Counted from the stretch's first letter, positions 2,096 through 44,374 are shown. The stretch: DNA of 47,624 nucleotides from Octopus bimaculoides (GCF_001194135.2 NC_068983.1:4521683-4569306), one strand, 5' to 3'. Notes: generated by a model not told the origin, from the sequence alone. Program-made: numbers and translations.

Positions 2096-2611
2096 TTGTT
2101 CACCTCGTTAATTACAATGTTGTAACATTTATTTAGTGATTCTTTCGTCGCTGTTTTGGTAAATATAATAAGGTCCATGTTCTACTGAGGAGGGCTTAAA
2201 AGACTGAAACATCGACGAAGTTGTCTCCTTTACTTGCAGAAATTATTAAAATAACGGATTTCAATTTAGGTACAAAACCAGCAATTTTGCAGAGGGAGTT
2301 CGTTGAAGCCATTTACCTCCAACACTTGACTGGTGCTAGATTTCAGATGATAAGAATTAATCATAGAGCTATATGTGTATTTCTCATTATACAATGATTA
2401 AAATTGTTGACTACATGAATACCAATTAGCTTATTGTTGTATACAGTAAGCAGGTGAGCGACATCCCGTTGGAAAAGGTGAAACGTTCAAAGAAAGAAAG
2501 GACAGACGGCAGCAATAAGACAAGTAAAGAAAGACGGCTATGAAAACCCGATGGACACCCAAAGGGCTCAGAATAAAACGCGGAAAGAGAGAAGGGTGAA
2601 CATTATATTAG

Positions 2612-3150
2612 GTCGTCCGTCGTTGTCGACGATGACCACGGACATCAAATGGGAGAAGACGATGGGGAATGGTGTGTCCGGCGGTGGTCAGTCAGCCTGA
2701 TGTGTGCTCTGAAGCCTCTAATGTAGATTGGACACTGATGGTCAGTTGGGACTAAAGACAAGGAATTGGCTCTGGACTTGCATAGCTCACGTTTTCTTTC
2801 TGTCCCTTTTGTTTGGAAGTGGTGACACCTCTATTGGCGCAGCTTCGCCAAGCAGGGAGGTCCTGTGTTTGCATTCCCCAGGTGTCGGGGTTGATCTCAG
2901 GTTTCTTGCGTGAGGCTTTGAGCATATCCTTGAGGCACTTTTACTGTCCACCCTGGGTGCGCCTGCTTTCCGCTAGTTCACTGTAAAACAGTCTCTTGGG
3001 GAGTTGCTTGTCAGCCATTCGAACAAGGCAGCCTGTCCGTCTCACTGGCGCTGTTCTCAGCAATGTGCAAATGCTTGGCACAGTAAACGAGACATAAAGA
3101 CGAAAGGAGGTGAGCTGGTATGTTTCGAGAAGCATGGAATTTATGAAGGA
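2612..3150 (-). mobile_element. RTE-clade LINE, 3' fragment (decayed end of ORF and 3' UTR)
   Basis: Minus-strand translation VPSICTLLRTAPVRRTGCLVRMADKQLPKRLFYSELAESRRTQGGQ*KCLKDMLKAS...INPDTW matches the RTE C-terminal pattern (RWAGHVVRM..RLPK.LLYGEL..GKR..GGQKKRFKD.LK). It contains stops. Confidence 0.85.
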
Positions 3151-3605
3151 TGCAGTGTTCTGACGGTGGGTAATTCGAATTCGAATATACCAGTAAAGTA
3201 AATGTAGTAGATAAGTAGGGAAGGAAAAGTGACAATAACTTTTGCAAGAAAGAAAAAAAGCTCTAATTAGAGTTATTTCCCTTAGACTACATTTTTGAAA
3301 TAACTTACTACTGGGTTATTTCCCTTGGACTGTAAAATTTGCTTAAAATTCTAATCGTTTGGAAAGACATTTTTGATATATATCTCTATGCTTTGCTTGA
3401 CTCCCCAAATATACATGGTTACAGGTAGAAAAGATGCATTCAAAAGAGTAAATGTTTGCTTTCATAGAAAATATATAACTCAGGGATGTTATCTACATAA
3501 AAAAAACAATAATTAGGTGTTAATAAATTAACACCTAATGAATCCACTTCATTTCAATTATTTTACAAAATAATGAAGTTTAGTAAAATGTTCTGCTACT
3601 ACACA

Positions 3606-3768
3606 CCGTATTTTAACGTGTATAAGGAACCCTTTTTTGTCAAAAATTAGTTTTAAAAAATATAAGAGTTTCTTATACATGGATAGTATTATAATCCCTT
3701 ACAAAACCTTTTCTCCAATTTTCAAGCCCCAAAAATTAGGGGTTCCTTTTATACACGTTAAAATACGG
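3606..3768. mobile_element. pogo/Tc1-mariner-type MITE, 163 bp
   Basis: About 27-bp TIRs CCGTATTTTAACGTGTATAAGGAACCC / GGGTTCCTTTTATACACGTTAAAATACGG; TA on the right flank, CA on the left. Confidence 0.85.
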
Positions 3769-3894
3769 TAGATCTCATTCAGAGATTTAAAACTAGTTGT
3801 TTTTCTTCTTACGAGATCGACGACTGACAATCGCTTCGATAAGTATATACTGTAAGTAAGGTCAGCTGGCTGCTATCTCTAGCCAGATAATTGT

Positions 3895-3940
3895 CCAGTA
3901 CTGAAGAAGGGAAATTACCCAGAAACCACTGGTCTGCTAG
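3895..3940 (+). ncRNA. Minimal type-I hammerhead motif, unrelated family X
   Basis: CCAGUA CUGAAGA A GGG-AAAUUA-CCC A GAA ACCA-C-UGGU C|UGCUAG: GUC triplet, near-palindromic stem III, stem I with one wobble and one mismatch. Confidence 0.55.
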
Positions 3941-4270
3941 CACTGCTGATAGACCAGCTGGGAAAGATGTTTTCCTGGGGTTAAAAAGTAGTAACACATT
4001 CCTATTTAGGACTGCCACGTTATGTTGGCAAATAAACTTTACTGTCCAGTGCTGTTACTGATTTCATTCAGAGATTCAAAAATAGTTGTTTTTCTCCTTT
4101 AGTAAAATAATTTTGTTTTTAAAGTAGTTGTATACTGTCAACTTAGCGTGACAGTGCCAATAAGGGAATCATACTACTGCTATTTAGCCCTAGGAAGCTG
4201 GACTGCTTCCTGTCAGTCTTGACACATTTCCTGTGTCCTTATGTTTACAAGGGGGAGACAAGCACCCCCA

Positions 4271-4314
4271 CCCAGGGACATGTTTCTGAGTTTTTGCTCA
4301 TCATCAGCCTGAAG
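4271..4314 (-). ncRNA. Minimal type-I hammerhead motif, unrelated family Y (fully paired)
   Basis: Minus strand reads CUUCAGG CUGAUGA UGAG-CAAAAA-CUCA GAAAC AU GUC|CCUGGG: 6-bp stem I (4 Watson-Crick, 2 G-U), 4-bp stem II, palindromic ACAUGU, GUC triplet. Predicted cut between 4277 and 4276. Confidence 0.75.
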
Positions 4315-4419
4315 TAGCATCACTAGCTGGCTGAAGATGCCGGTGAGATTTATAATTAGATCATTTCTAATTTTTGTAATCAGTGAATGTGTTTCACTAG
4401 AAATATATGTTTACAAGAG

Positions 4420-4610
4420 CTTGACAAATTTTGGCACAAGGCCAGCAATGTTGAGGGAGGGGTTAAGGCAACAGCATTGACCCTTGTGCTCAACTGGCAA
4501 TTATGTTACTGACCCCAAAAGGATGAAAGACAAAGTCAACCTTGGTGGAATTTGAACTAAGAAAACAAAGATGGATGGAATACTGCTAAGCATTTTGGCA
4601 GCTTGCTGCC
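4420..4610 (-). mobile_element. SINE family A, degenerate
   Basis: AAAGGATGAAAGACAAAGTCAACCTTGGTGGAATTTGAACT is homologous to 115-326. Confidence 0.7.
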
Positions 4611-4660
4611 TTAAAAATAATTTAAATCGATTTTTGTGTTCTGGTCATGTGACAAAAGAT

Positions 4661-5032
4661 ATGGCTGTGTGGTAAGTAGCATGCTTACCAGCCACATGGT
4701 TCCAGGTTCAATCCCACTGCATGGCACCTTGGGAAAATGTCTTCTACTATAGCCTCAGGCCGATCAAAACCTTGTGAGTGGATTTGGTAGACGGAAACTG
4801 AAAGAAGCCCGTCGTATATATGTGTGTATATGTTTGTGTGTCTGTCCCCTCCAACATCGCTTAACAACCGATGCTGGTGTGTTTATGTCCCTGTAACTTA
4901 GCGGTTCAGCAAAAGAGACCGATAGAATAAGTACTAGGCTTACAAAGAATAAGTCCTGGGTTCGATTTGCTCGACTAAAGGTAGTGCTCCAGCATGGCCA
5001 CAGTCAAATGGCTGAAACAAGTAAAAGAGTAA
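4661..5032 (+). mobile_element. Bipartite tRNA SINE, family B (CORE-like centre, microsatellite linker)
   Basis: GGCTGTGTGGTAAG...GGTTCAATCCCACTGCATGGCACCTTGGGAAAATGTCTTCTACTATAG...(TG)n...CAGCATGGCCACAGTCAAATGGCTGAAACAAGTAAAAGAG; many copies in the window. Confidence 0.88.
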
Positions 5033-5069
5033 ATTCACAACAAACAAATCTGTTTTCGAATAAAAATGT

Positions 5070-5075
5070 TTTAAT
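5070..5075 (-). promoter_or_regulatory. Candidate polyadenylation signal ATTAAA
   Basis: Variant hexamer about 90 nt downstream of the stop codon on the gene strand; no transcript evidence. Confidence 0.3.
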
Positions 5076-5165
5076 AGAAATTTCATAACAAACATAACTT
5101 ATGAGCTGCTTATGAAAGTTTCCTGTTTTCATAAAAATCTGTCAGATTATGGAATTAAGATTATC

Positions 5166-5490
5166 CTAAAGTTTTGAAAGAGTGATATAATCTTTCAGTA
5201 TCTTTGGTAAAGGTAGGAACTGTGATTTGTACAGAATCTGAGAATGTAACTCTTGTCGAATGACAATGCGCGTGAGAGCTTGTAGAGTCATTGGAGAGGA
5301 ATAAATATTGGCCAACCAGTTCCTGATGTCTGCTTCTAAGATGAATGGAGTAAAACAGTTAATGATGACAGAAGCGGCAGACTGCTTGACCGAGTCAGTC
5401 GTTAAAGAAACGTCTTGGTTATCTTTGGACTCGAGTGGTTCTGCATAGTTACCGGAAAATATCAAAGTCTTCAACAATTTTGTTTTTTGG
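5166..5490 (-). CDS. ASB-like terminal coding exon with SOCS box
   Basis: Acceptor tttctaatttcag|CCAAAA; ends in TAG at 5166-5168. C-terminus SPMTLQALTRIVIRQELHSQILYKSQFLPLPKILKDYITLSKL has BC-box and cullin-5-box (LPLP) spacing. Confidence 0.92.
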
Positions 5491-7788: not shown

Positions 7789-10700
7789 TTAACGTCCATT
7801 GTCCATGCTGGCATGGGTTGGACGGTTCAACTGGGGCGTCTGGGAAGCCAGGAGGCTGCACCAGGCTCCAATCTGATCTGGCAGTATTTCTACAGCTGGT
7901 TGCCCTTCCTAACGCCAATATATTGAATAAATAGGTTACAGTAAATATAGACATGTATAACTATGAAGCTTTCAAGCAACAAATGGCTAAAACCCTCACC
8001 ATATCCCCTAATCTGCTGTGGAAAAATTCCGACCACTCCCCTCCCCCCCAAGTAACTAAAATTGGACGACTGACACATTGCTATAAAACAAAGAACTGTG
8101 AGCAATTGATGGCAAGCAGTTCAGTGTGAGCTGTTGACAGAGAATGTTTAACCTCATGTAGTAGTAATCATATTGTGTCATGTGAATACTTTCTTTCCCC
8201 TTGCTTCATTAAATTATTTCTCTGACACTAGGATACAAACGTGGCAGTGAGTTGTTTGAAACTTGTGCTGGACATTTAGAATATTTCTTTTGTATGAAAC
8301 CAAAGAAAAATTCGTTTTAACATGGAAGACTTATTGGCCTCCGTGGTGCAGTTGCAACGACAACAGCAACTACAAAACCAACAGTTGCTGGAATTAATGT
8401 TGAAGAAGTCTGAAAATACTTCAGGTTTGTACTTGCCAGACAACATGGCAAACTCAGTTGAAGAATTCAATTATAATCCAAAAGAAGGGATTATATTTCC
8501 AAAGGTACAAAGAAATCTTCAAAGGAAGAATGTAAAAATTGGTCTGACGAGAAAAAAAGTACAACTGCTTTTCAGTAAGTGATAAGTGAGATTTGTTTTG
8601 ATGAAACAATATTTTATTGAAAATTTTCAGTGAAAGTAGTTCCCTGTTCAATACTCACTGGAAATGTTTGAATTTGGTTAAAAAAGATGAAGATTTCATC
8701 ACTTTATGCTGGGGTTGTTAACAGAGAGTGTGAAAATTTCAAATGAAATGAATTAACCCTAGACATGTTCAAAAGTCTAATTTTTGTTCAAGGACTTACT
8801 GAAAGCAAAGATGCAGATATACGTTCCCAGATATAAACAAAATTAGAACAGGATCAAAAACTGACTCTACAGACAGTAGCAGAAGAATGCGAGAGGATTG
8901 TAAATTTAAGACATGACAAAGATAAAATTGAAGGAAAAGATTGCTCTCACATTCATGCATGTCAACTGGTAACAGATAAGAAAAAAGAGAAAGAATGCCA
9001 AAACTGAATCTATGTTATGGTCTACATTCTAAAAGGAATTGTCTGTTTTGAAATATAAAATGCTTCAAGTGCAGTAAGATAGGTCTTAAAAAATCACATA
9101 AACAGGTTATCGGGGCCAAGAGATACGAATGAGCCTCAAAGAAAATGTGTGTGTGTAGAAATTAATAACACAAATGTAAAGTTACAATTGAATACGGGCA
9201 GTGATAGCTCGGTAATTAATACAAATACATGGGAAAAATTCAGGAGACCTTCATTAAAATAAACTTTGAAAATTGCACGTGATGCTTCAGGATAAAAATT
9301 ACATTTTAAGGGTGAAATGTTAAATGATATTATATTTTGTGGGAAAACCTTAAAAGCCAAAGTTTTTATGCTGAATGATATGATAAATTTATATATTATA
9401 TAAAGTGCATAAGTGTAATTCCGTGAAATATTCATGCTTATTTATGTGACAGATATATGCAATTTAATTAAAGGTTGTATCATATGTACGGGACATCTTT
9501 TTTTTGTTTATGGGGGAAATAGAAAAATATGAGTGAATATTTATGAGCGCTGTGTATTAAGTCTATAAAACTGTAATATAAAGTGTATATATGTATATAT
9601 ATATATATAAAGTGCATTAAGTAATCATTGTATTCCAATTTCTTTCACTTTTCAATGAGCAGCAGATGAGTGACTATCTTTTGGGATAAATTTTCCAGGA
9701 ATAACCCAACAGGTTTACTATTAATTTCGCGAAATATTCACAAGTCCCGCTAGTTATGAATATTTGTATAGTGGACATGTTTTGTGCAAGGCCAGTCTCA
9801 CCCTCTCGTCCTTCAAATTTGTATAGTTTGGGTGCATCAAGTGTCAGAAGCCCAGTGGTTATCAAGAAGCAGGACTTGTATGGAGTTACCTTCTCTTGGC
9901 TAAAGAGCTGAAAGGCTTCATCTACCTTGGGCCCAGTGGGGTACCTGTGAGTGACCTTCTACCAGAGATAATTCCATGACATGTTAATTAACCCAAAACT
10001 GGGACCATCACAGGTTTTACTAGCTCTGGGTCAGAGTAGACCGGAGAACAACGGCGGCCAAGAGAGGGTTCCACACTCTTTCAAACCCTGTAGTTCCTGA
10101 ACCAGGGTCCCACTGCTGGATGCAGGTGAAAGTCACCCAATAATGTGTGTGTGTGTGTGTGTGTACACAATATAGTCACAGGCATGACTATAGGGTAAGA
10201 AATTTGATTCCCGACCACATAGTTCCAGGTTCAATCCCACTGAATGACACCTTGGGCAAGTCTCTTCTACAATAGACTCAGACCGACCAAAGCCTTGTGA
10301 GTGGATTTGGTAGATGGAAACTGAAAGAAGCATGTCATACATACATATTTATACACACACATATCTATGTATGTGTGTCTTTATCTGTCATCCCACCACT
10401 TGACGACTGGTGTTGATGTGTTTACACCGCTGCAACTTAGCGATTCGGCAAATGAGTCCGACAGAATAAGTGCCAAGATTTAAAACAAAATAAGTAGTGG
10501 GGTCAATTCATTTGACTAAAAATTCTTCAAGGTGGTGCCCCAGCATGGCCACAGTCTAATGACTGAAACAAGATAAAAGAGAGAAATCTTTTGCATATAA
10601 CTGCAGACCAAATTATTGAAAATGGAATCAATCTGGAATCAATCTGGATTTCAGAAACTCTTTCAGAGGAAGATCTCACTTGGTCAGAATTATTAACCCA

Positions 10701-13700: not shown

Positions 13701-16091
13701 ACATTCCATTTGTTAATGTCGTTAAATAATTTACAAGTTAAAAGGACATTTGGTATTTATCTGCCATGATCTTGATGTCTCACTTTAATAAAAGACAACC
13801 AATGAAGGGTGAATGAAGAGGGTGAAGTAAAAGAGTCATCATCATCATCATCATCATTTAACGTCCGCTTTCCATGCTAGCATGGGTTGGACGATTTGAC
13901 TGGAGACTGGTGAAACCAGATGGCTACACCAGGCTCCAATCTGATTTGGCAGAGTTTCTACAGCTGGATGCCCTTCCGAACGCCAACCACTCCAAGTGTG
14001 GAATGGGTGCTTTTTTACGTGCCACCAGCATGAGGGCCAGTACGATGGTACTGGCAATGGCCATGCTCAAATGGTGTTTTTTATGTGCCACCTGCACAGG
14101 AGTCAGTCCAATGCTTTGTTCACATGCCACCAGCACAAGTGCCAGTAAGGCGAAGCTGGCAAAAATGTACAAGTTGATGAAACATGGTTATATGAAGGAT
14201 AGAAATGTGGTGGCCATTGTTGGCTGGGCCTTTTGACTTGCTTCAGTCATCAGAGAGTGGCCATGCTGGAGCACTGCCTTGAAGAATTTTTAGTCAAATG
14301 AATCGACCCCAGTAATTATATTTTTTTCTAAAGCCTGGTATTTATTCTATCAGTAGAGATGTAAACACACCAACACCGGTTATCAAGCAGCAGGGGGAGG
14401 GACAAACACACACANNNNNNNNNNNNNNNNNNNNNNNNNNNNNNNNNNNNNNNNNNNNNNNNNNNNNNNNNNNNNNNNNNNNNNNNNNNNNNNNNNNNNN
14501 NNNNNNNNNNNNNNNNNNNNNNNNNNNNNNNNNNNNNNNNNNNNNNNNNNNNNNNNNNNNNNNNNNNNNNNNNNNNNNNNNNNNNNNNNNNNNNNNNNNN
14601 NNNNNNNNNNNNNNNNNNNNNNNNNNNNNNNNNNNNNNNNNNNNNNNNNNNNNNNNNNNNNNNNNNNNNNNNNNNNNNNNNNNNNNNNNNNNNNNNNNNN
14701 NNNNNNNNNNNNNNNNNNNNNNNNNNNNNNNNNNNNNNNNNNNNNNNNNNNNNNNNNNNNNNNNNNNNNNNNNNNNNNNNNNNNNNNNNNNNNNNNNNNN
14801 NNNNNNNNNNNNNNNNNNNNNNNNNNNNNNNNNNNNNNNNNNNNNNNNNNNNNNNNNNNNNNNNNNNNNNNNNNNNNNNNNNNNNNNNNNNNNNNNNNNN
14901 NNNNNNNNNNNNNNNNNNNNNNNNNNNNNNNNNNNNNNNNNNNNNNNNNNNNNNNNNNNNNNNNNNNNNNNNNNNNNNNNNNNNNNNNNNNNNNNNNNNN
15001 NNNNNNNNNNNNNNNNNNNNNNNNNNNNNNNNNNNNNNNNNNNNNNNGCTGGAGCACCGCCTTTAGTCAGATAAATCGCCCCCAGAATTTATTCTTTGTA
15101 AACCTAGCACTTATTCTATCGGTCTCTTTTGCTGAACCGCTAAGTTACAGGGACGTAAACACACCAACATTGGTTGTCAAGCGATGGTGGGAGGGGACAA
15201 GCACAGACACACAAACATACACACACACACATATATATACGATGGGCTCCTTTCAGTTTCCGTCTACTAAATCCACTCATAATGCTTTGGTTGGCCTGAG
15301 GCTATAGCAGAAGACACTTGCCCAAGGTGCCACGCAGTGGGACTGAACCCGGAACCATGTGGTTGGTAAGCAAGCTACTTACCACACAGCCACACTTGCG
15401 CCTATATTGCAAAAAGAGAGATGGAGAGGGGGAGTGTCTGTTGGTCCTTCTGATTCTCTCAGGCCATCGATGTAATCAATGTTCAATCAGAACCTCTAAA
15501 ATATTGGGTGTTGCAGGATGAATAGTGGGGTACGTGGAGTAGATATATTGTGATGTTTGGTTTGAATTTTGTGTAGAGATTCTGAGTACAAGGCTGTACC
15601 ACAGGATATGTGTTGGTGTTGTATGTTAATATGATAACAAGTTTACTGTGTACAGTACTCAGGTGTACCACAACTTGTTGGAAAAGAACAAAAGAGAGGA
15701 CGGAAAACAAATATATAAATCATATAAATAAAGAAAGCAATGATAATAAAAATACATGCATAAGAATAACAAGAGAGAAGAGTGAACGTTTAAAGAGGAA
15801 CCATTGAGAGGAAAGGGTGCAGAGACATTTTCAGGAATCATGCTGGTGTATTTTGGGAAGAATGGAATTTTTCAAGAAGGATGCTATGTCCTCTTGATGC
15901 TGTGTGTTGATCTTGGTGTTGGGTGGTGTATTTTGGCATTGCTAAACAGGACAAAACTATTGGGTTCCCATTACTAGATGCTTTCAAAGTTTCGATTCCT
16001 AAGATTTATGGTTGCCTGGCGAGAAGTATTTTGGGTTTTATGTGGACAAGTTAACTGAGGTAATTGCATTCCTCTCTGGGTGAAGGTGAAG

Positions 16092-16137
<46 letters not shown>

Positions 16138-17554
16138 GTGGAGGGGAGACATGGAAGGATAGGATAAGGGTGGTTAATGCTTCAGCACGAATCAAACAGG
16201 ATGATTAACTGTCAGAGTGAAACTTGATCCAACCTTCTCGTCAGTATATCCCATACTATAATCTATCTATATTCCACACATGATTAACAAAGATATTTAT
16301 AAATATCAGAGAAAAATAACTGCACAGAGTGCATTGTTAAGTGCAGGACTTTGGTAAAGAGAGAGAGTGGAAAGGGGGAGTGTGCGTTAGGGGAAGACAG
16401 GGTGTAGCAGGGTAAATGGTGAGGGTGGTTTACAGTAGGTATGTTCTGAACGGAATAACTAACACCACAGCCAATGAAATCTAGAATCGTTACGATAAAG
16501 GTAAGGCTTCATGCATTAGTAGATCAATTATTGAGATAATTATAAATAAACAAGCCAACGTAAGTAGCTTGTATGTGGATGCTCAGTTAGCTAGAAATAG
16601 CTGTCACATCTTCCTTAAATTGCCCTCCACTGTATTAAAGAGAAAAAAAGAATGGATACATTAGATAATGCAGTGCTAGATGTCTGAGCAAGAAAAGAAA
16701 ATGATGGTTACGAAGATAAGTTTATTGAAACATGGCTGAACTAGAGCTAAACAACAACACAAGGTATGTGTATATGAGAGGGGGAGATGATGAGAGAAGG
16801 AGAGAGAGAGAGATGATGAGAGAGAGAGAGATGGGGGGAGAGGGAGAGAGAGATGGGGAGAGAGGGAGAGAGAGATGATGAGAGAGGGAGAGAGAGATGA
16901 TGAGAGAGGGAGAGAGAGATGGGGAGAGAGAGCAAGAATGGAAAACACAAGTGTTTGCTTTTTATGCTTCACCTGAAGGAAAACAAAAAAGATAAGACGT
17001 CATCACCCACCACTCAAGACACTTCACCCATGCCCACCACCACCGACTGGAACTACAGACGGTTTATTGCAATTAATCATAATCAAAATAATCAATCAAG
17101 ACAGACTAATTAAGAGTTAATAAAAGCATACGATCGTGTAAACAATCTTATAAACTGAACTCAATCATTAAACTTAATTAGAGCTAAGATTTAATTAAGA
17201 TGTTGTCGTTGCTGTTTAGCCTACAATCAGTCCTGACAGCAGAACTACAAGTAAAAGTATTCCAGCCACGCCCATCATGTTTGTTTTTTATATATACACA
17301 TATATACACATACATATATACATTGTGTATTTAGAACTAGATCATTCAATGCGCTCTTTTACTTGTTTCAGTCATTTGACTGCGGCCATGCTGAAGCACC
17401 GCCTTTAGTTAAGCAAATCGACCCCAGGACTTATTCTTTGTAAGCCTAGTACTTACTCTATCGGTCTCTTTTGCCGAACCGCTAAGTTACGGGGATGCAA
17501 ACACACCAGCATCTGTTGTCAAGCGATGTTGTGGGGACAAACACAGACATACAA

Positions 17555-17596
<42 letters not shown>

Positions 17597-18688
17597 GACG
17601 GGCTTCTTTCAGTTTCCATCTACCAAACCCACTCATAATGCTTTGGTCGGCCTCAGGCTATAGTAAAAGACACTTGCCCAAGGTGCTACACAGTGGGACT
17701 GAACCCAGAACCATGTGGTTGGTAAGCAAGCTACTAACCACACAGCCACTCCTTTACATTTCTTTCAGACAGCAGGGTGTAGTTTAAGAGGGATAAGGCT
17801 GCTATTTCTAGTGGGTTGAGCATCCATATAGAGGCTTAGAATTAACCTATAATTACAGTTAGGTTCTATGGGGGGTGAATATTTTGGCAATGACAAAAAT
17901 ATAAATCACAACATGTCTGCAAAGTGGTTTGCATAAGGAAGGGCATCCAGGTGTAGAAAGCTTGCCAGAGCAGACATTGGTATACGATGCTCATCCGATC
18001 TTGTCAAGCCATCCAAATCATGCCAGCATGGAACATGGATTCTAAATGATGAGGAAGATTATATGTGTGTGAGTGTGTGTGTAGGCGTGGCTGTGTGGTA
18101 GGAAGCTTGCTTCCCAACCACATGGTTCTGAGTTCAGTCCCACTGCATGGCACCTTGTGCCTGGAGTACAAAAGGAAGTTTAATGCAACACAATCAACTG
18201 TTGGGATCTAAGTTAAGACTTCATGTAATGATGTCACAGTTAGATAAAAACATAAACCAGGCCTCCTGACTTGTAACCATGTGGTTTTGGGTTCAGTCCC
18301 ACTGGATGGCACCTTGGATAAATGTTTTCTATTATAGCCACAGGGCTGACTAATGTCATGTGAATGAATTTAGTGGATAGAAACTGTACAAAGCCTGTTG
18401 TGCGTGTGTGTGTGTGAGTCCATGTCAGTGGTTACATTCTGCACTGAGCTGAGCTACGGATGGTGCCATTTGCTTACATTTTCCTTTCAACGAATTGTCC
18501 AGTAGCTCTGCACTTTCAACAAAAGACAAACAGATTAAAAAATCTTCCTGACTTGTAAAGCGAGGGTTAGTAACAGGAAGAGCATCCAGCTGTCAAATAA
18601 TGTCTCAATAATATGTATTCTTCTGACCCATGCCAGTACAGAGAAAGGGATGTAAAATTAACAAACAAACAAATGAATGGGTATGTGT

Positions 18689-22743: not shown

Positions 22744-24944
22744 TCACTGCCTGGAATCAAACTCAGAGTCTTGGAGTTAGTAGCCCACGCTCTTAACCAC
22801 TGTGCCATATGCACAGATATCTCGCTATCTTCTGTATGAAATATCAATAATCTATCAATAAGCTATTAACATATTGACCTTTTATAGCTGCTTCATAAAC
22901 CGGAGTAACCCCATATTTGTTTGACACATCTTTCTGACAGCCAGCATCAGACAGAATCTGAAAACATGAAAAAGAAAAATTCATAAATTGAAATTCCACA
23001 TAAAAAGAAGAGTGAAGTCACTCTTTAGCAGTGGACTTAATGGTTTTGATGGCATGAACAATATTTTCTTTCCTCGAAAAATGTCTCAAAAAAATCACCT
23101 TGGCCCTATATGCAAAGGTGGACCTTCCATAAGTTTTAATACATTAAAAACAACGATCACGCTTGGACGGTGCTCTTAGCGCTCCACTGGTACAGGGGCC
23201 ATCACGATTTCGCTTTCACTTGCCCCAACAGGTCTTCGCAAGTTGAGTTTAGTGTTCAATGAAGGAGACGTTAGTATGGGTGCCAGTCGTCGAATTTAGT
23301 TTGATTTTGATTTCACTATATATATATATATATATATATATTCTTTTATTCTTTTACTTGTTTCAGTCATTTGACTGAAACAAGTAAAAGCACCACCTTT
23401 AGTCAAGTAAATCAACCCCAGGACTTACTTTTTGTAAGCCTAGTACTTATTCTATTGGTCTCATTTGCCGATCCGCTAAGTTACAGGGGACGTAAATACA
23501 TCAGCATCAGTTGTCAAGCGATGTTGGGGAGGGGGGACAAACACAGACACACAAATACACACACACATATATATAGATATAGATATACAATGGGCTTCTT
23601 TCAGTTTCCGTCTACCAAATCCACTCACAAGGATCCACTCTACTAAATCCACTCATGAGGCTATAGTAAAAGACACTTACCCAAGGTGCCACGCAGTGGG
23701 ATTGAACCCAGGACCATGTAGTTGGTAAGCAAACTACTTACCACACAGCCACTACTATGCCTATATATATATATATATATNNNNNNNNNNNNNNNNNNNN
23801 NNNNNNNNNNNNNNNNNNNNNNNNNNNNNNNNNNNNNNNNNNNNNNNNNNNNNNNNNNNNNNNNNNNNNNNNNNNNNNNNNNNNNNNNNNNNNNNNNNNN
23901 NNNNNNNNNNNNNNNNNNNNNNNNNNNNNNNNNNNNNNNNNNNNNNNNNNNNNNNNNNNNNNNNNNNNNNNNNNNNNTGCACACTAATCGACTTATACTT
24001 ACTTGTCCAAATTATTTGTATTCTTATTATTTTCCTTAACAAATTTAGACATTTATCCACTCCCATATATATTTTTTCTTCATGCACAAGCTTTCCCTTT
24101 TCTTCTCTCACACTGTGCTTTCCACACATTTTCAATCGAATCTCCTGTGAGTTAACATGGGATCCCTTCATTTGACTAAGGTATTTTAGGCTTGAAGAGT
24201 AGCTAGTGCAGTACACCCCTCATTTTGGGTAATTGCTATTTGTGAGGCTCTGCTGGGAAACACATGTAGCCTGGATTTTATTTACTCCATTCTCTAAATT
24301 TGGATATATATATATATACTTATATGTGCCCTATGATCACCATGTGGGAATGTATGTGTGTATGTGTGTGTTTGTCCTCTACTGCTTGATAACTGGTGTT
24401 GGTTTGTTTACATCACTGTAATCTAGCAGTTCAGCAAAAAAGAATTGATAAAAGAGGAACTAGATATTAAAGAAAAAAGTGGGGCTGATTTGTTAAACAT
24501 AACCTTTCAGGGTTATGCTCCAGCATGGTCACAACCCAATAACTGAGACAAGAAGGAAATAAGAGATAATCTAGGACTACATTATCCAATATTCCATTCC
24601 TTTATTTGGAGAAAGTAGGATTTGGTTTGAAAGAGATTTAACATCTATTTCTAGCACATACCTAGAGCCTCCCTTGTTATCTCAAATCACTCACGTGTAA
24701 CTGTAACAATGCATTTTATATTAAAGAGAAGAAACAAGAACGCTTATCCAAGAATGAACTGAAGCAGAAAATAGAAAACACATGTTTGACTTTGGCATCA
24801 AAAAGAAATGTGAAGAGCGTCTTGAAAGCTGCCCTGTATTCCTCCTCAGAATAAAAACACAAGTAATTGGTAAATGAAAGCAACACTAATTGTAGAGGAT
24901 GTCTACTAAAGATAGTTTGTGTAAACAAATATATAAATAAATAA

Positions 24945-44134: not shown

Positions 44135-44374
44135 GATTTCCCTTGGATGTACCAATACTAATAACTAGTTTTTAGAACTCAATATACATATACAAGTGTA
44201 CTTTCTGAAATAAACATTCACTTCATTTTAATGGTCCCCAAGGAAGCTATAAGATGTTGCACAAGCACTTAGCTCTGAGTGCACTGCTTCTTACAACAGA
44301 AACAGCTGTAAGCTAATGAAGTTGACTACATGATTCCTGTTCCCTTGTCAGTCATTAATTAAAATACATAAATT

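What the first reader, a model, noticed from the sequence alone, without database searches (positions are those of the whole stretch)
4271..4314. Fully paired GUC hammerhead, sense to the ASB gene, about 890 nt past its stop codon
Seen: on the gene strand, CUUCAGG CUGAUGA UGAG-CAAAAA-CUCA GAAAC AU GUC|CCUGGG has all three stems and the optimal GUC triplet; ACAUGU is a perfect palindrome. By eye I found only one ATTAAA and no AATAAA on this strand between the stop and this site. Established: hammerheads in 3' UTRs can destabilise mRNA (rodent Clec2 genes). Inference: if the 3' UTR or read-through RNA reaches 4277, the motif could affect transcript stability or termination. Minimal motifs usually need dimers, so in cis activity may be low.
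Basis: partly seen in the sequence, partly recalled or inferred. Interest (0 to 1): 0.7.

Follow-up and report, generated by a model that had tools for sequence, protein, structure and literature searches.

The report
Hammerhead ribozyme relic in octopus repeat
The hammerhead ribozyme motif is really there, but it belongs to a roughly 300-base mobile-element copy that sits downstream of an octopus ankyrin/SOCS-box gene only in Octopus bimaculoides, so it is an ordinary transposon-borne ribozyme rather than a regulator of that gene.

Summary
On the minus strand at 4313-4271 there is an intact type I hammerhead core, with C17 at 4277, 889 nt past the stop codon of an Ank/SOCS-box gene of Octopus bimaculoides. 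Only one ATTAAA and no AATAAA lies between the stop and the motif.

It is not chance: I expect about 2e-5 such motifs per window. It lies in a 303-bp block (4122-4424) that belongs to a dispersed non-coding repeat family of about 280 bp. Other copies, in O. sinensis and O. vulgaris, carry a hammerhead at the homologous position, with compensatory changes in helices I and III and one in helix II.

The block is absent from the orthologous 3' flank in O. sinensis and O. vulgaris. The only canonical poly(A) hexamer (ATTAAA, 91 nt after the stop, followed by a GU-rich stretch) is conserved in all three species and lies about 790 nt upstream of the ribozyme.

Helix III is only the palindrome ACAUGU. 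That is the dimer-dependent architecture known from amphibian satellite and retrozyme/Penelope-like-element hammerheads, and no second same-strand copy is nearby.

Best reading: a solo retrozyme-like or PLE-related hammerhead relic, probably inert in cis. A role in ASB mRNA stability is not supported. This is a new member of a known kind, of low interest.

The parts
4271..4313 (-). Type I hammerhead motif: helix I UUCAGG/CCUGGG, core CUGAUGA, helix II UGAG/CUCA with loop CAAAAA, GAAA, palindromic helix III ACAUGU, C17 at 4277 (predicted cleavage between 4277 and 4276).
   Evidence: Sequence read. My descriptor hit at 4312-4272. Custom CM R1 gives 49.9 bits at 4271-4313; this sequence was in R1's training set. 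Rfam Hammerhead_HH9 gives 20.9 bits, below its gathering score of 52, over 4254-4325.
4314..4316 (-). UAC immediately 5' of helix I, at the position of the loop-1 UAC of canonical metazoan type I hammerheads.
   Evidence: Alignment to the Rfam HH9 consensus (UUAC-CUGCAG versus CUAC-UUCAGG) together with the identical loop 2 CAAAAA. That these nucleotides make a tertiary contact is inferred from established hammerhead structure.
4122..4424 (-). 303-bp copy of a dispersed non-coding repeat (retrozyme-like / PLE-related) that carries the hammerhead. Present in O. bimaculoides and absent at the orthologous site in O. sinensis and O. vulgaris.
   Evidence: Synteny breaks at 4425/4424 and 4122/4121. 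nhmmer finds homology to copies at L002 33447-33726, L002 40483-40783 and L003 8370-9057, 91282-91556 and 102100-102391.
3867..4043 (+). Older, internally shortened copy of the same repeat family in inverted (tail-to-tail) orientation, shared by all three Octopus species. It has a hammerhead-like motif at 3895-3940 (+): CCAGUA CUGAAGA AGGG-AAAUUA-CCCA GAAA CC-ACU-GG U C|UGCUAG.
   Evidence: Family HMM hits. Three-species alignment with 95% mean column identity. CM R1 gives 61.2 bits; this sequence was in R1's training set.
5070..5075 (-). ATTAAA, the only canonical poly(A) hexamer between the stop codon and the hammerhead, followed by a GU/U-rich stretch. It is the likely poly(A) signal of the gene.
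   Evidence: Hexamer scans. Conserved in O. sinensis and O. vulgaris within a 135-nt stretch that is about 98% identical. Actual use as a poly(A) signal is inferred.
5166..5477 (-). ORF covering the last coding exon (SOCS box) of the Ank/SOCS-box gene; stop codon at 5168-5166.
   Evidence: Pfam SOCS_box E=7.4e-8. Identical to the C-terminus of P0001 / XP_052821949.
4662..5033 (.). SINE-like repeat between the likely poly(A) site and the hammerhead element, with many copies in the window. It is not part of the hammerhead element.
   Evidence: Self-BLAST of the window.

Best explanation
The motif is a bona fide type I hammerhead ribozyme sequence carried by a solo, roughly 300-bp copy of a non-autonomous retroelement family. 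The family resembles a non-LTR retrozyme or a Penelope-like-element (PLE) derivative. The copy lies in the intergenic DNA downstream of an Ank/SOCS-box gene in Octopus bimaculoides.

In such elements the ribozyme's native job is to cut multimeric element RNA. Two copies pair through the palindromic helix III (here ACAUGU). The I-5'/core/II/GAAA part of one copy then acts on the GUC|helix I-3' part of the other.

This copy is alone. It sits about 790 nt past the likely poly(A) signal and is not conserved in sister species. It is therefore most likely a neutral relic: little or no self-cleavage in cis, and no function for the ASB-like gene.

Shown: the sequence, family membership by homology, covariation, absence from the orthologous loci, and the absence of a partner copy.
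Inferred: the mobilisation mechanism, the poly(A) site and the lack of activity.
For: 1. The core and helices are exact. The chance expectation is about 2e-5 per window, with 0 hits in 30 Mb of random sequence.
2. nhmmer aligns the 303-bp block, with the hammerhead in register, to repeat copies in O. sinensis and O. vulgaris. One of these, L002 33505-33549 = L003 91341-91385, has a complete type I hammerhead: UCUGUG CUGAUGA AGGG-AAAUAA-CCUG GAAA AU-CGCG-AU A|CACAGA.
3. Across 8 hammerhead copies, 81% of cells pair, against 19-38% when partners are slid. Eight of 13 pairs change on both sides, and the helix III palindromes covary: AUCGCGAU, AUUGCAAU, ACAUGU.
4. Copies occur as inverted and tandem clusters with precise 3' ends and no ORF. 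This is the insertion pattern described for PLEs (PMC8557442).
5. The architecture matches the published canonical metazoan type I hammerhead: 6-bp helix I, 4-bp helix II, and a 1-2 bp helix III with a small palindromic loop, working as dimers (PMC4209133; PMC7229834). Loop 2 CAAAAA and loop 1 UAC match the Rfam HH9 consensus.
6. The block is absent from the O. sinensis and O. vulgaris orthologous flanks.
7. ATTAAA plus a GU-rich element at 5075, conserved in three species, is the only canonical signal before the motif.
8. There is no tandem repeat and no second same-strand hammerhead nearby.
9. The hammerhead fold is not the predicted minimum-energy fold: -7.5 versus -13.4 kcal/mol as a monomer, and -19 for the double hammerhead versus -36 for an alternative dimer.
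Against: - I could not search the rest of the O. bimaculoides genome, so the subfamily that gave rise to this copy was not seen. The copy is only about 60% identical to the O. sinensis/O. vulgaris copies, and its helices I and III are organised differently.
- No PLE reverse-transcriptase/GIY-YIG ORF was found next to any copy, so the PLE link rests on arrangement and on the literature.
- O. sinensis and O. vulgaris have an unrelated 2.35-kb mosaic at exactly the same breakpoints. Without an outgroup, insertion in O. bimaculoides cannot be told from replacement in the other lineage.
- The core is fully intact, which might hint at youth or at constraint.
- No RNA data were available, so long 3' UTR isoforms reaching 4277 cannot be excluded.
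- Rfam does not call the motif at its gathering score.
Confidence: 0.8

Rival explanations
1. Exapted cis-regulatory ribozyme. The hammerhead cleaves ASB-like transcripts that extend or read through to 4277. This would destabilise long 3' UTR isoforms, or give an entry site for 5'-3' exonuclease that helps transcription termination.
For: It is sense to the gene, 889 nt after the stop, with an intact core and a GUC site. There is no AATAAA and only one ATTAAA before it. RNA polymerase II normally transcribes beyond the poly(A) site (established knowledge), so read-through RNA probably contains the motif.
Against: The block is not present at the orthologous position in O. sinensis or O. vulgaris. 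The ATTAAA and GU-rich element at 5075 are conserved and would end the mRNA about 790 nt earlier. The helix III architecture needs a second copy and none is nearby on this strand. The motif is clearly part of a repeat family. The hammerhead fold is not thermodynamically favoured.
Confidence: 0.05
2. The copy still takes part in ribozyme chemistry in trans. It belongs to a currently active O. bimaculoides retrozyme subfamily whose abundant RNAs share the ACAUGU palindrome and helix I, so transcripts through this locus could dimerise with them and be cut.
For: The core and all helices are intact. Helix I differs from the O. sinensis/O. vulgaris copies by compensatory changes, which suggests a separate subfamily kept under ribozyme constraint. 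Retrozyme RNAs can be very abundant in molluscs (PMC7229834). The block is lineage-specific.
Against: No other copy of this variant occurs in the 78 kb of O. bimaculoides DNA available. No exact match to the core plus helix II was found in the metagenome collection. Expression is untested.
Confidence: 0.13
3. Chance resemblance: a random sequence that happens to satisfy the hammerhead consensus.
For: About one such motif is expected by chance in a 2.7-Gb genome (my analytic estimate; one search gave no null hits to contradict it). Rfam does not call it at its gathering score. The fold z-score is -0.18.
Against: The expectation per window is about 2e-5. The flanking 300 bp are homologous to repeats that carry a hammerhead at the same aligned position. 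The helices covary. Loop 1 and loop 2 match the canonical type I consensus.
Confidence: 0.02

Closest known systems
Canonical metazoan type I hammerheads of non-LTR retrozymes (Cervera and de la Pena 2020, PMC7229834; Li et al. 2026 preprint, 10.64898/2026.07.22.740005)
   Same: Type I topology, 6-bp helix I, 4-bp helix II with a 6-nt A-rich loop, a very short helix III with a palindromic loop, a non-coding host element of about 300 bp with low GC, and occurrence in molluscs.
   Different: This is a solo monomer, not a tandem array. Helix II closes with U-A, and with A.G or A.A in the sister copies, instead of G10.1-C11.1. circRNA expression is unknown. The octopus family has not been described, as far as my literature searches show.
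Newt/salamander satellite 2 hammerhead (HHR_Amex1 type)
   Same: As a hairpin, helix III reduces to one base pair capped by a palindromic tetraloop (A-CAUG-U here). This type is described as nearly inactive as a single motif and active as a double hammerhead (PMC7229834; PMC4209133).
   Different: The amphibian motifs sit in arrays of tens of thousands of 330-bp tandem repeats, so the partner copy is in the same transcript. Here there is no partner.
Minimal hammerheads in the pseudo-LTRs of Penelope-like elements (Cervera and de la Pena 2014, PMC4209133)
   Same: Palindromic 15.x-16.x positions, dimer logic, high sequence variability with covariation between families, mostly dispersed solo motifs, and inverted/tandem insertion clusters.
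   Different: PLE minimal hammerheads typically have a long helix II (7-8 bp), a bulged nucleotide after A9 and a conserved G10.1-C11.1. The focal motif has the canonical 4-bp helix II. No RT/GIY-YIG ORF is adjacent. A motif closer to the PLE minimal type is at L003 27754-27800.
Rfam Hammerhead_HH9 (RF02275), the amniote intronic type I hammerhead
   Same: Best Rfam match. It has the same core, the identical loop 2 CAAAAA, UAC in loop 1 and a GUC site.
   Different: The score is 20.9 bits against a gathering score of 52. HH9 has a stable 3-bp helix III hairpin and a G-C closed helix II, and it is conserved at orthologous intronic sites. None of these applies here.
Discontinuous hammerhead in rodent Clec2 3' UTRs
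   Same: A hammerhead sense to a protein-coding gene and downstream of its stop codon.
   Different: The Clec2 ribozyme lies inside the mature 3' UTR, is split by a long insertion, is active in cis, and is conserved among orthologues. The octopus motif is beyond the likely poly(A) site, is contiguous, depends on a dimer and is lineage-specific.

Membership tests
Hammerhead ribozyme (type I) | Conserved core: C3 U4 G5 A6 N7 G8 A9, G12 A13 A14, A15.1-U16.1, H17 not G | tested here: met
   CUGAUGA ... GAAA ... U C, all in place.
Hammerhead ribozyme (type I) | Three helices around the core, with helix I open | tested here: inconclusive
   Helix I (6 bp, two of them G.U) and helix II (4 bp) form. 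Helix III is only the palindrome ACAUGU, which gives 1 bp plus a tetraloop as a monomer and 6 bp only in a dimer.
Hammerhead ribozyme (type I) | G10.1-C11.1 closing pair of helix II (highly conserved; PMC4209133) | tested here: not met
   U10.1-A11.1 in the focal copy; A.G or A.A in the seven related copies (pair 14-27).
Hammerhead ribozyme (type I) | Reaches the curated Rfam gathering score of a hammerhead model | tested here: not met
   No match at gathering scores. HH9 scores 20.9 bits against 52 when only 106 nt are searched.
Hammerhead ribozyme (type I) | Base pairs supported by covariation among homologues | tested here: met
   81.4% of cells paired versus 19-38% in slid controls. Eight of 13 pairs change on both sides; 0 of 500 shuffles reach the score. 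Caveats: only 8 sequences from about 3 lineages, and I extracted the sequences in register with the hammerhead model.
Hammerhead ribozyme (type I) | Site-specific self-cleavage | not testable with these tools
   Needs in vitro transcription of monomer and dimer constructs.
Non-LTR retrozyme | Short non-coding unit (about 170-400 bp) carrying a type I hammerhead | tested here: met
   A 303-bp block and a family HMM of about 280 bp, with no ORF.
Non-LTR retrozyme | Head-to-tail tandem repeats with a complete hammerhead in consecutive units | tested here: not met
   TRF finds no array at 3300-5200. The CM finds no second same-strand motif. The nearest thing to a tandem is L003 8443-9069, whose two copies have mutated cores.
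Non-LTR retrozyme | Expressed as small circular RNAs | not testable with these tools
   No RNA data.
Penelope-like element pseudo-LTR | Repeat flanks an ORF encoding RT plus GIY-YIG endonuclease | tested here: not met
   No such ORF was seen in open-frame listings of window 1-16.6 kb and 32.3-47.6 kb (the middle of that listing was cut from the output), of L002 32.5-41.5 kb, or among all open frames of 140 aa or more in L001-L003. The only RT ORFs I saw, judged by eye from the translations, are LINE-type; one matches proteins carrying Pfam RVT_1 and endonuclease/exonuclease domains.
Penelope-like element pseudo-LTR | Complex inverted or partial-tandem insertion clusters | tested here: met
   Tail-to-tail pair at window 3867-4043 (+) and 4122-4424 (-). 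Head-to-head pair at L002 40471-40796. Cluster at L003 8341-9069. The pattern is as described in PMC8557442.
3' UTR regulatory hammerhead (Clec2-like) | Located within the mature mRNA 3' UTR | tested here: inconclusive
   Sequence signals place the poly(A) site near 5050. No transcript data.
3' UTR regulatory hammerhead (Clec2-like) | Conserved at the orthologous position in related species | tested here: not met
   Absent from O. sinensis L002 and O. vulgaris L003.

The most novel reading that the evidence does not exclude
A lineage-specific insertion of a retrozyme-type hammerhead downstream of a poly(A) site has been co-opted in O. bimaculoides as a co-transcriptional cleavage element. Alternatively, it is cut in trans by abundant sister RNAs. 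Either way it would shape termination or long 3' UTR isoforms of the Ank/SOCS-box gene. This would be a first example of a transposon-delivered hammerhead acting on a host gene in a cephalopod.
Probability: 0.04. Interest if true: 0.6.

Novelty: new member of a known kind. Interest (0 to 1): 0.22.

Why it matters
It matters little for the gene. For annotation, it shows that octopus genomes carry hammerhead-bearing short repeats that Rfam's gathering thresholds miss. In about 215 kb examined I counted several loci, roughly one per 16-25 kb. That is a rough extrapolation from one genomic region. A hammerhead near a gene end is therefore expected background, not a signal.

The family is a modest curiosity for ribozyme specialists. 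It has an A.G or A.A (and once U-A) pair in place of G10.1-C11.1, three different helix III designs, and clear covariation. It would be a convenient entry point for describing retrozymes or PLE-derived elements in cephalopods, for which I found no dedicated description in the searchable literature. The only mention was a count of 235 Rfam hammerhead_1 loci in the giant squid genome (PMC6962438).

Tried and rejected
- Rfam at gathering scores over the whole window found nothing. With the E-value threshold over 1 kb it found no hammerhead. Only a 106-nt search gave a sub-threshold HH9 match. The intact O. sinensis copy gave no hammerhead match either.
- My first protein search, with the last exon alone, found nothing, although the identical protein is in the database. 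This is a limit of the word index.
- The 12-nt direct repeat CTTGTAAACATA (4418-4407 and 4250-4239) was considered as a target-site duplication or a trace of a tandem unit. It does not extend, and its alignment score (12) lies within the range of shuffles (mean 8.8, maximum 16). Rejected.
- I looked for a PLE ORF between the O. sinensis copies at L002 33.7-40.5 kb and found none.
- I tried to sample more O. bimaculoides DNA through a LINE RT query. No O. bimaculoides proteins came back.
- An exact-product look-up of the last-exon ORF, to find transcript or other-species contigs, found nothing on record. The O. vulgaris isoform P0120 was also not on record.
- Transcript contigs of a more distant cephalopod orthologue (L004-L009) end in a T-run about 147 nt after the stop. 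They are uninformative about poly(A) sites.
- A metagenome scan for the exact core plus helix II found 0 matches.
- An empty-site comparison for the O. sinensis intronic copies was not clean, because the surrounding sequence has turned over.
- Two null-model scripts failed to return. I replaced them with a faster one and an analytic estimate.
- No tRNA-like (SINE-type) part was found around the element.

Full report
**What is there**

The minus strand of the window at 4320-4262 reads GCUAC-UUCAGG-CUGAUGA-UGAG-CAAAAA-CUCA-GAA-ACAUGU-C|CCUGGG-UGG. Every invariant hammerhead core position is present: C3-A9 as CUGAUGA at 4307-4301, G12-A14 at 4286-4284, A15.1 at 4283, U16.1 at 4278 and C17 at 4277. 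Helix I is 6 bp (four Watson-Crick, two G.U). Helix II is 4 Watson-Crick bp with a 6-nt loop.

Helix III is only the self-complementary hexamer ACAUGU. As a hairpin that gives one A-U pair closing a CAUG tetraloop. As a duplex between two copies it gives 6 bp.
- Helix III is 'fully paired' only in a dimer.
- Helix II closes with U10.1-A11.1, not the highly conserved G10.1-C11.1.

**The gene and the organism**

The minus strand carries ankyrin-repeat exons at 29558-29421, 27187-26777 and 19144-19019. Its last exon has a SOCS box (Pfam PF07525, E=7.4e-8) and a stop codon at 5168-5166.

The joined exons match XP_052821949 of Octopus bimaculoides. The listed 83% identity reflects the exons I left out; the shared exons are identical. 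The window is 100% identical over 2.2 kb to the chromosome-level O. bimaculoides assembly (locus L001).

C17 lies 889 nt after the stop codon. No other gene was called within 10 kb downstream.

**Chance**

I used a descriptor with a 6-bp helix I, CUGANGA, a 4-bp helix II with a 3-10 nt loop, GAAA, a palindromic helix III of up to 8 nt, and UH. My analytic estimate is about 2e-10 matches per position at this base composition. That is about 2e-5 per window and about one per 2.7-Gb genome.

Thirty megabases of random sequence gave no hit, even with helix I relaxed to 3 bp. A relaxed form of the descriptor (5-bp helix I, one helix II mismatch allowed) recovered exactly this site and one independent site in O. 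sinensis/O. vulgaris. Taken alone the motif could be the genome's one chance hit. The next result excludes that.

**It is part of a repeat family that carries hammerheads**

nhmmer with window 4440-4100 as query found relatives of about 60% identity in the orthologous loci of O. sinensis (L002) and O. vulgaris (L003), with the CUGAUGA...GAAA segment aligned in register. A family HMM of about 280 positions then found further copies:
- L002 33409-33714 and its orthologue L003 91245-91550
- a head-to-head inverted pair at L002 40471-40796 (= L003 102098-102404)
- a cluster at L003 8341-9069
- an older, internally shortened copy right next to the focal one, in the opposite orientation, at window 3867-4043 (+); it is orthologous in all three species (95% mean column identity)

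The copy at L002 33505-33549 has a complete canonical type I hammerhead: UCUGUG CUGAUGA AGGG-AAAUAA-CCUG GAAA AU-CGCG-AU A|CACAGA. The old inverted copy has CCAGUA CUGAAGA AGGG-AAAUUA-CCCA GAAA CC-ACU-GG UC|UGCUAG at 3895-3940 (+).

Eight hammerhead segments were aligned in register. On that alignment:
- 81% of cells form standard pairs, against 19-38% when the partners are slid.
- Eight of 13 pairs change on both sides.
- No shuffle out of 500 reaches the observed covariation score.

The helix III palindromes covary (AUCGCGAU, AUUGCAAU, ACAUGU). Helix I differs between the three lineages almost entirely through compensatory changes.

The caveats are the small number of independent lineages and my model-guided extraction of the segments. 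The slid controls nevertheless make the signal clear. The focal hammerhead is thus a descendant of a ribozyme that was maintained at the level of the element.

**What kind of element**

The copies are non-coding. They have no tRNA-like part. Their 3' ends are precise and coincide with synteny breakpoints (window 4122; L002 33721). They occur in inverted or partial-tandem clusters.

That arrangement, and a type I hammerhead with a 6-bp helix I, a 4-bp helix II and a tiny palindromic helix III, is what has been described for two things:
- the canonical metazoan hammerheads of non-LTR retrozymes
- the pseudo-LTRs of Penelope-like elements, with which retrozymes are thought to share ancestry and machinery

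The sources are PMC4209133, PMC7229834, PMC8557442 and preprint 10.64898/2026.07.22.740005.

When only 106 nt are searched, Rfam's best model is Hammerhead_HH9, at 20.9 bits against a gathering score of 52. The alignment shows the identical loop 2 (CAAAAA) and the UAC of loop 1 at the canonical distance. These are the nucleotides that make the loop-loop contact in canonical type I hammerheads. That they do so here is inferred from established structure.

I did not find an RT/GIY-YIG ORF beside any copy, and the focal copy is not in a tandem array. I therefore file it as retrozyme-like or PLE-related, not as a proven member of either.

**Does it matter for the gene?**

Four results argue against it.

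1. The block is not conserved. Colinear alignment with O. sinensis runs from window 5517 to 4425 (89% identity) and resumes at 4121 (85%). The 303 bp between, which hold the hammerhead, have no counterpart. O. sinensis and O. vulgaris have instead an unrelated 2.35-kb mosaic of SINEs and unique sequence. Which state is ancestral cannot be decided without an outgroup.

2. The likely poly(A) signal comes well before the motif. The first 135 nt after the stop are about 98% identical in the three species. They contain the only canonical poly(A) hexamer before the motif, ATTAAA at 5075-5070, followed by a GU/U-rich stretch. The next AATAAA is at 2133. This predicts mRNA 3' ends near 5050, about 790 nt upstream of the ribozyme. 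Its actual use is inferred, not shown.

3. The helix III design is the dimer-dependent one. Published examples of this type are nearly inactive as single motifs. A covariance model built from the family finds no second same-strand hammerhead anywhere near; the neighbouring old copy is on the other strand.

4. Nearest-neighbour folding does not favour the active fold. The monomer hammerhead fold is -7.5 kcal/mol, against an MFE of -13.4 that pairs A6-U7-G8 with the CAU of helix III. The double hammerhead is -19, against -36 for an alternative extended dimer. Such calculations ignore tertiary contacts, so this is the weakest of the four.

**How common such motifs are here**

In the roughly 215 kb examined (window, L002, L003), the family model and my descriptor found several loci: three in the 47.6-kb window and five in the 115-kb O. 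vulgaris locus. They include a second hammerhead type with a long helix II and an ACAGCUGU palindrome at L003 27754-27800, and a decayed relative at window 44269-44316.

The giant squid genome paper lists 235 Rfam hammerhead_1 loci. Rfam thresholds missed every octopus copy examined here, so true numbers in cephalopods are probably much higher. Extrapolating from one genomic region is rough. Still, a hammerhead within a kilobase of a gene end is what one expects by position alone.

**Verdict**

The best explanation (confidence about 0.8) is a solo relic of a hammerhead-bearing non-autonomous retroelement, with no function for the gene. Remaining probability goes to participation in trans with an active O. 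bimaculoides subfamily (about 0.13), exaptation (about 0.05) and chance (about 0.02).

It is a new member of a known kind. Interest is low for the gene and modest for cataloguing cephalopod retrozymes.

Noticed in passing
L002 33505-33549 (+) = L003 91341-91385 (+): A complete canonical type I hammerhead sits in an intronic repeat copy of the O. sinensis/O. vulgaris orthologue: UCUGUG CUGAUGA AGGG-AAAUAA-CCUG GAAA AU-CGCG-AU A|CACAGA. Helix I continues after an internal loop. It has an AUA cleavage triplet and an A.G at the 10.1/11.1 position. Rfam does not detect it.
   Followed up: yes
window 3895-3940 (+), within 3867-4043: A hammerhead-like motif lies antisense to the gene in an old inverted copy shared by three Octopus species. 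It has a stable 3-bp helix III with a triloop and a GUC site. Helix I has one mismatch, and helix II has decayed further in O. sinensis and O. vulgaris.
   Followed up: yes
L003 27754-27800 (+); window 44269-44316 (+): A second hammerhead type has a 7-bp helix II flanked by A...A and an ACAGCUGU palindrome, resembling the PLE minimal hammerhead. The window holds a decayed relative (CUGAGUG core, GAAACAGCUGUA|AGCUAA) in an intron, antisense to the gene.
   Followed up: partly
window 5033-5168 (minus strand): The first 135 nt or so after the stop codon are about 98% identical between O. bimaculoides, O. sinensis and O. vulgaris, against 85-89% in the neighbouring DNA. The stretch includes ATTAAA and a GU-rich element and probably represents the whole 3' UTR.
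   Followed up: partly
window 4662-5033 and at least 15 other places (e.g. 15048-15392, 23345-23751, 17354-17748, 10215-10581): A very abundant SINE-like repeat (75-89% identity between copies) starts directly after the putative 3' UTR. A second repeat at 4475-4607 is also multicopy.
   Followed up: partly
window 2600-3315 (minus strand): A frameshifted 3' fragment of a LINE-type ORF (…LPKRLFYSELAESRRTQGGQ…, then a C-terminal Cys/His motif) lies downstream of the hammerhead element on the same strand.
   Followed up: no
L003 97623-100457 (-): An open 945-aa LINE ORF lies in an intron of the O. vulgaris orthologue, about 1.6 kb from repeat copies of the hammerhead family. Its database relatives carry endonuclease/exonuclease and RVT_1 Pfam domains. 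The closest database protein is 89% identical (a Logan contig).
   Followed up: partly
L002 43896-46243 = L003 about 105507-107825: Exactly where O. bimaculoides has the 303-bp hammerhead block, O. sinensis and O. vulgaris have an unrelated 2.35-kb mosaic of SINEs plus unique sequence. The two lineages share both breakpoints, which a single simple insertion does not explain.
   Followed up: partly
window about 14.4-15.0 kb, 32.3-33.1 kb, 46.8-46.95 kb: Runs of N (assembly gaps) lie next to CA/TG microsatellites. The window appears to come from a draft assembly version.
   Followed up: no
A search with the 103-aa last exon alone returned no homologue, although the identical C-terminus is in the database (P0001). 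A negative from the word-indexed protein search is not reliable for short queries.
   Followed up: yes
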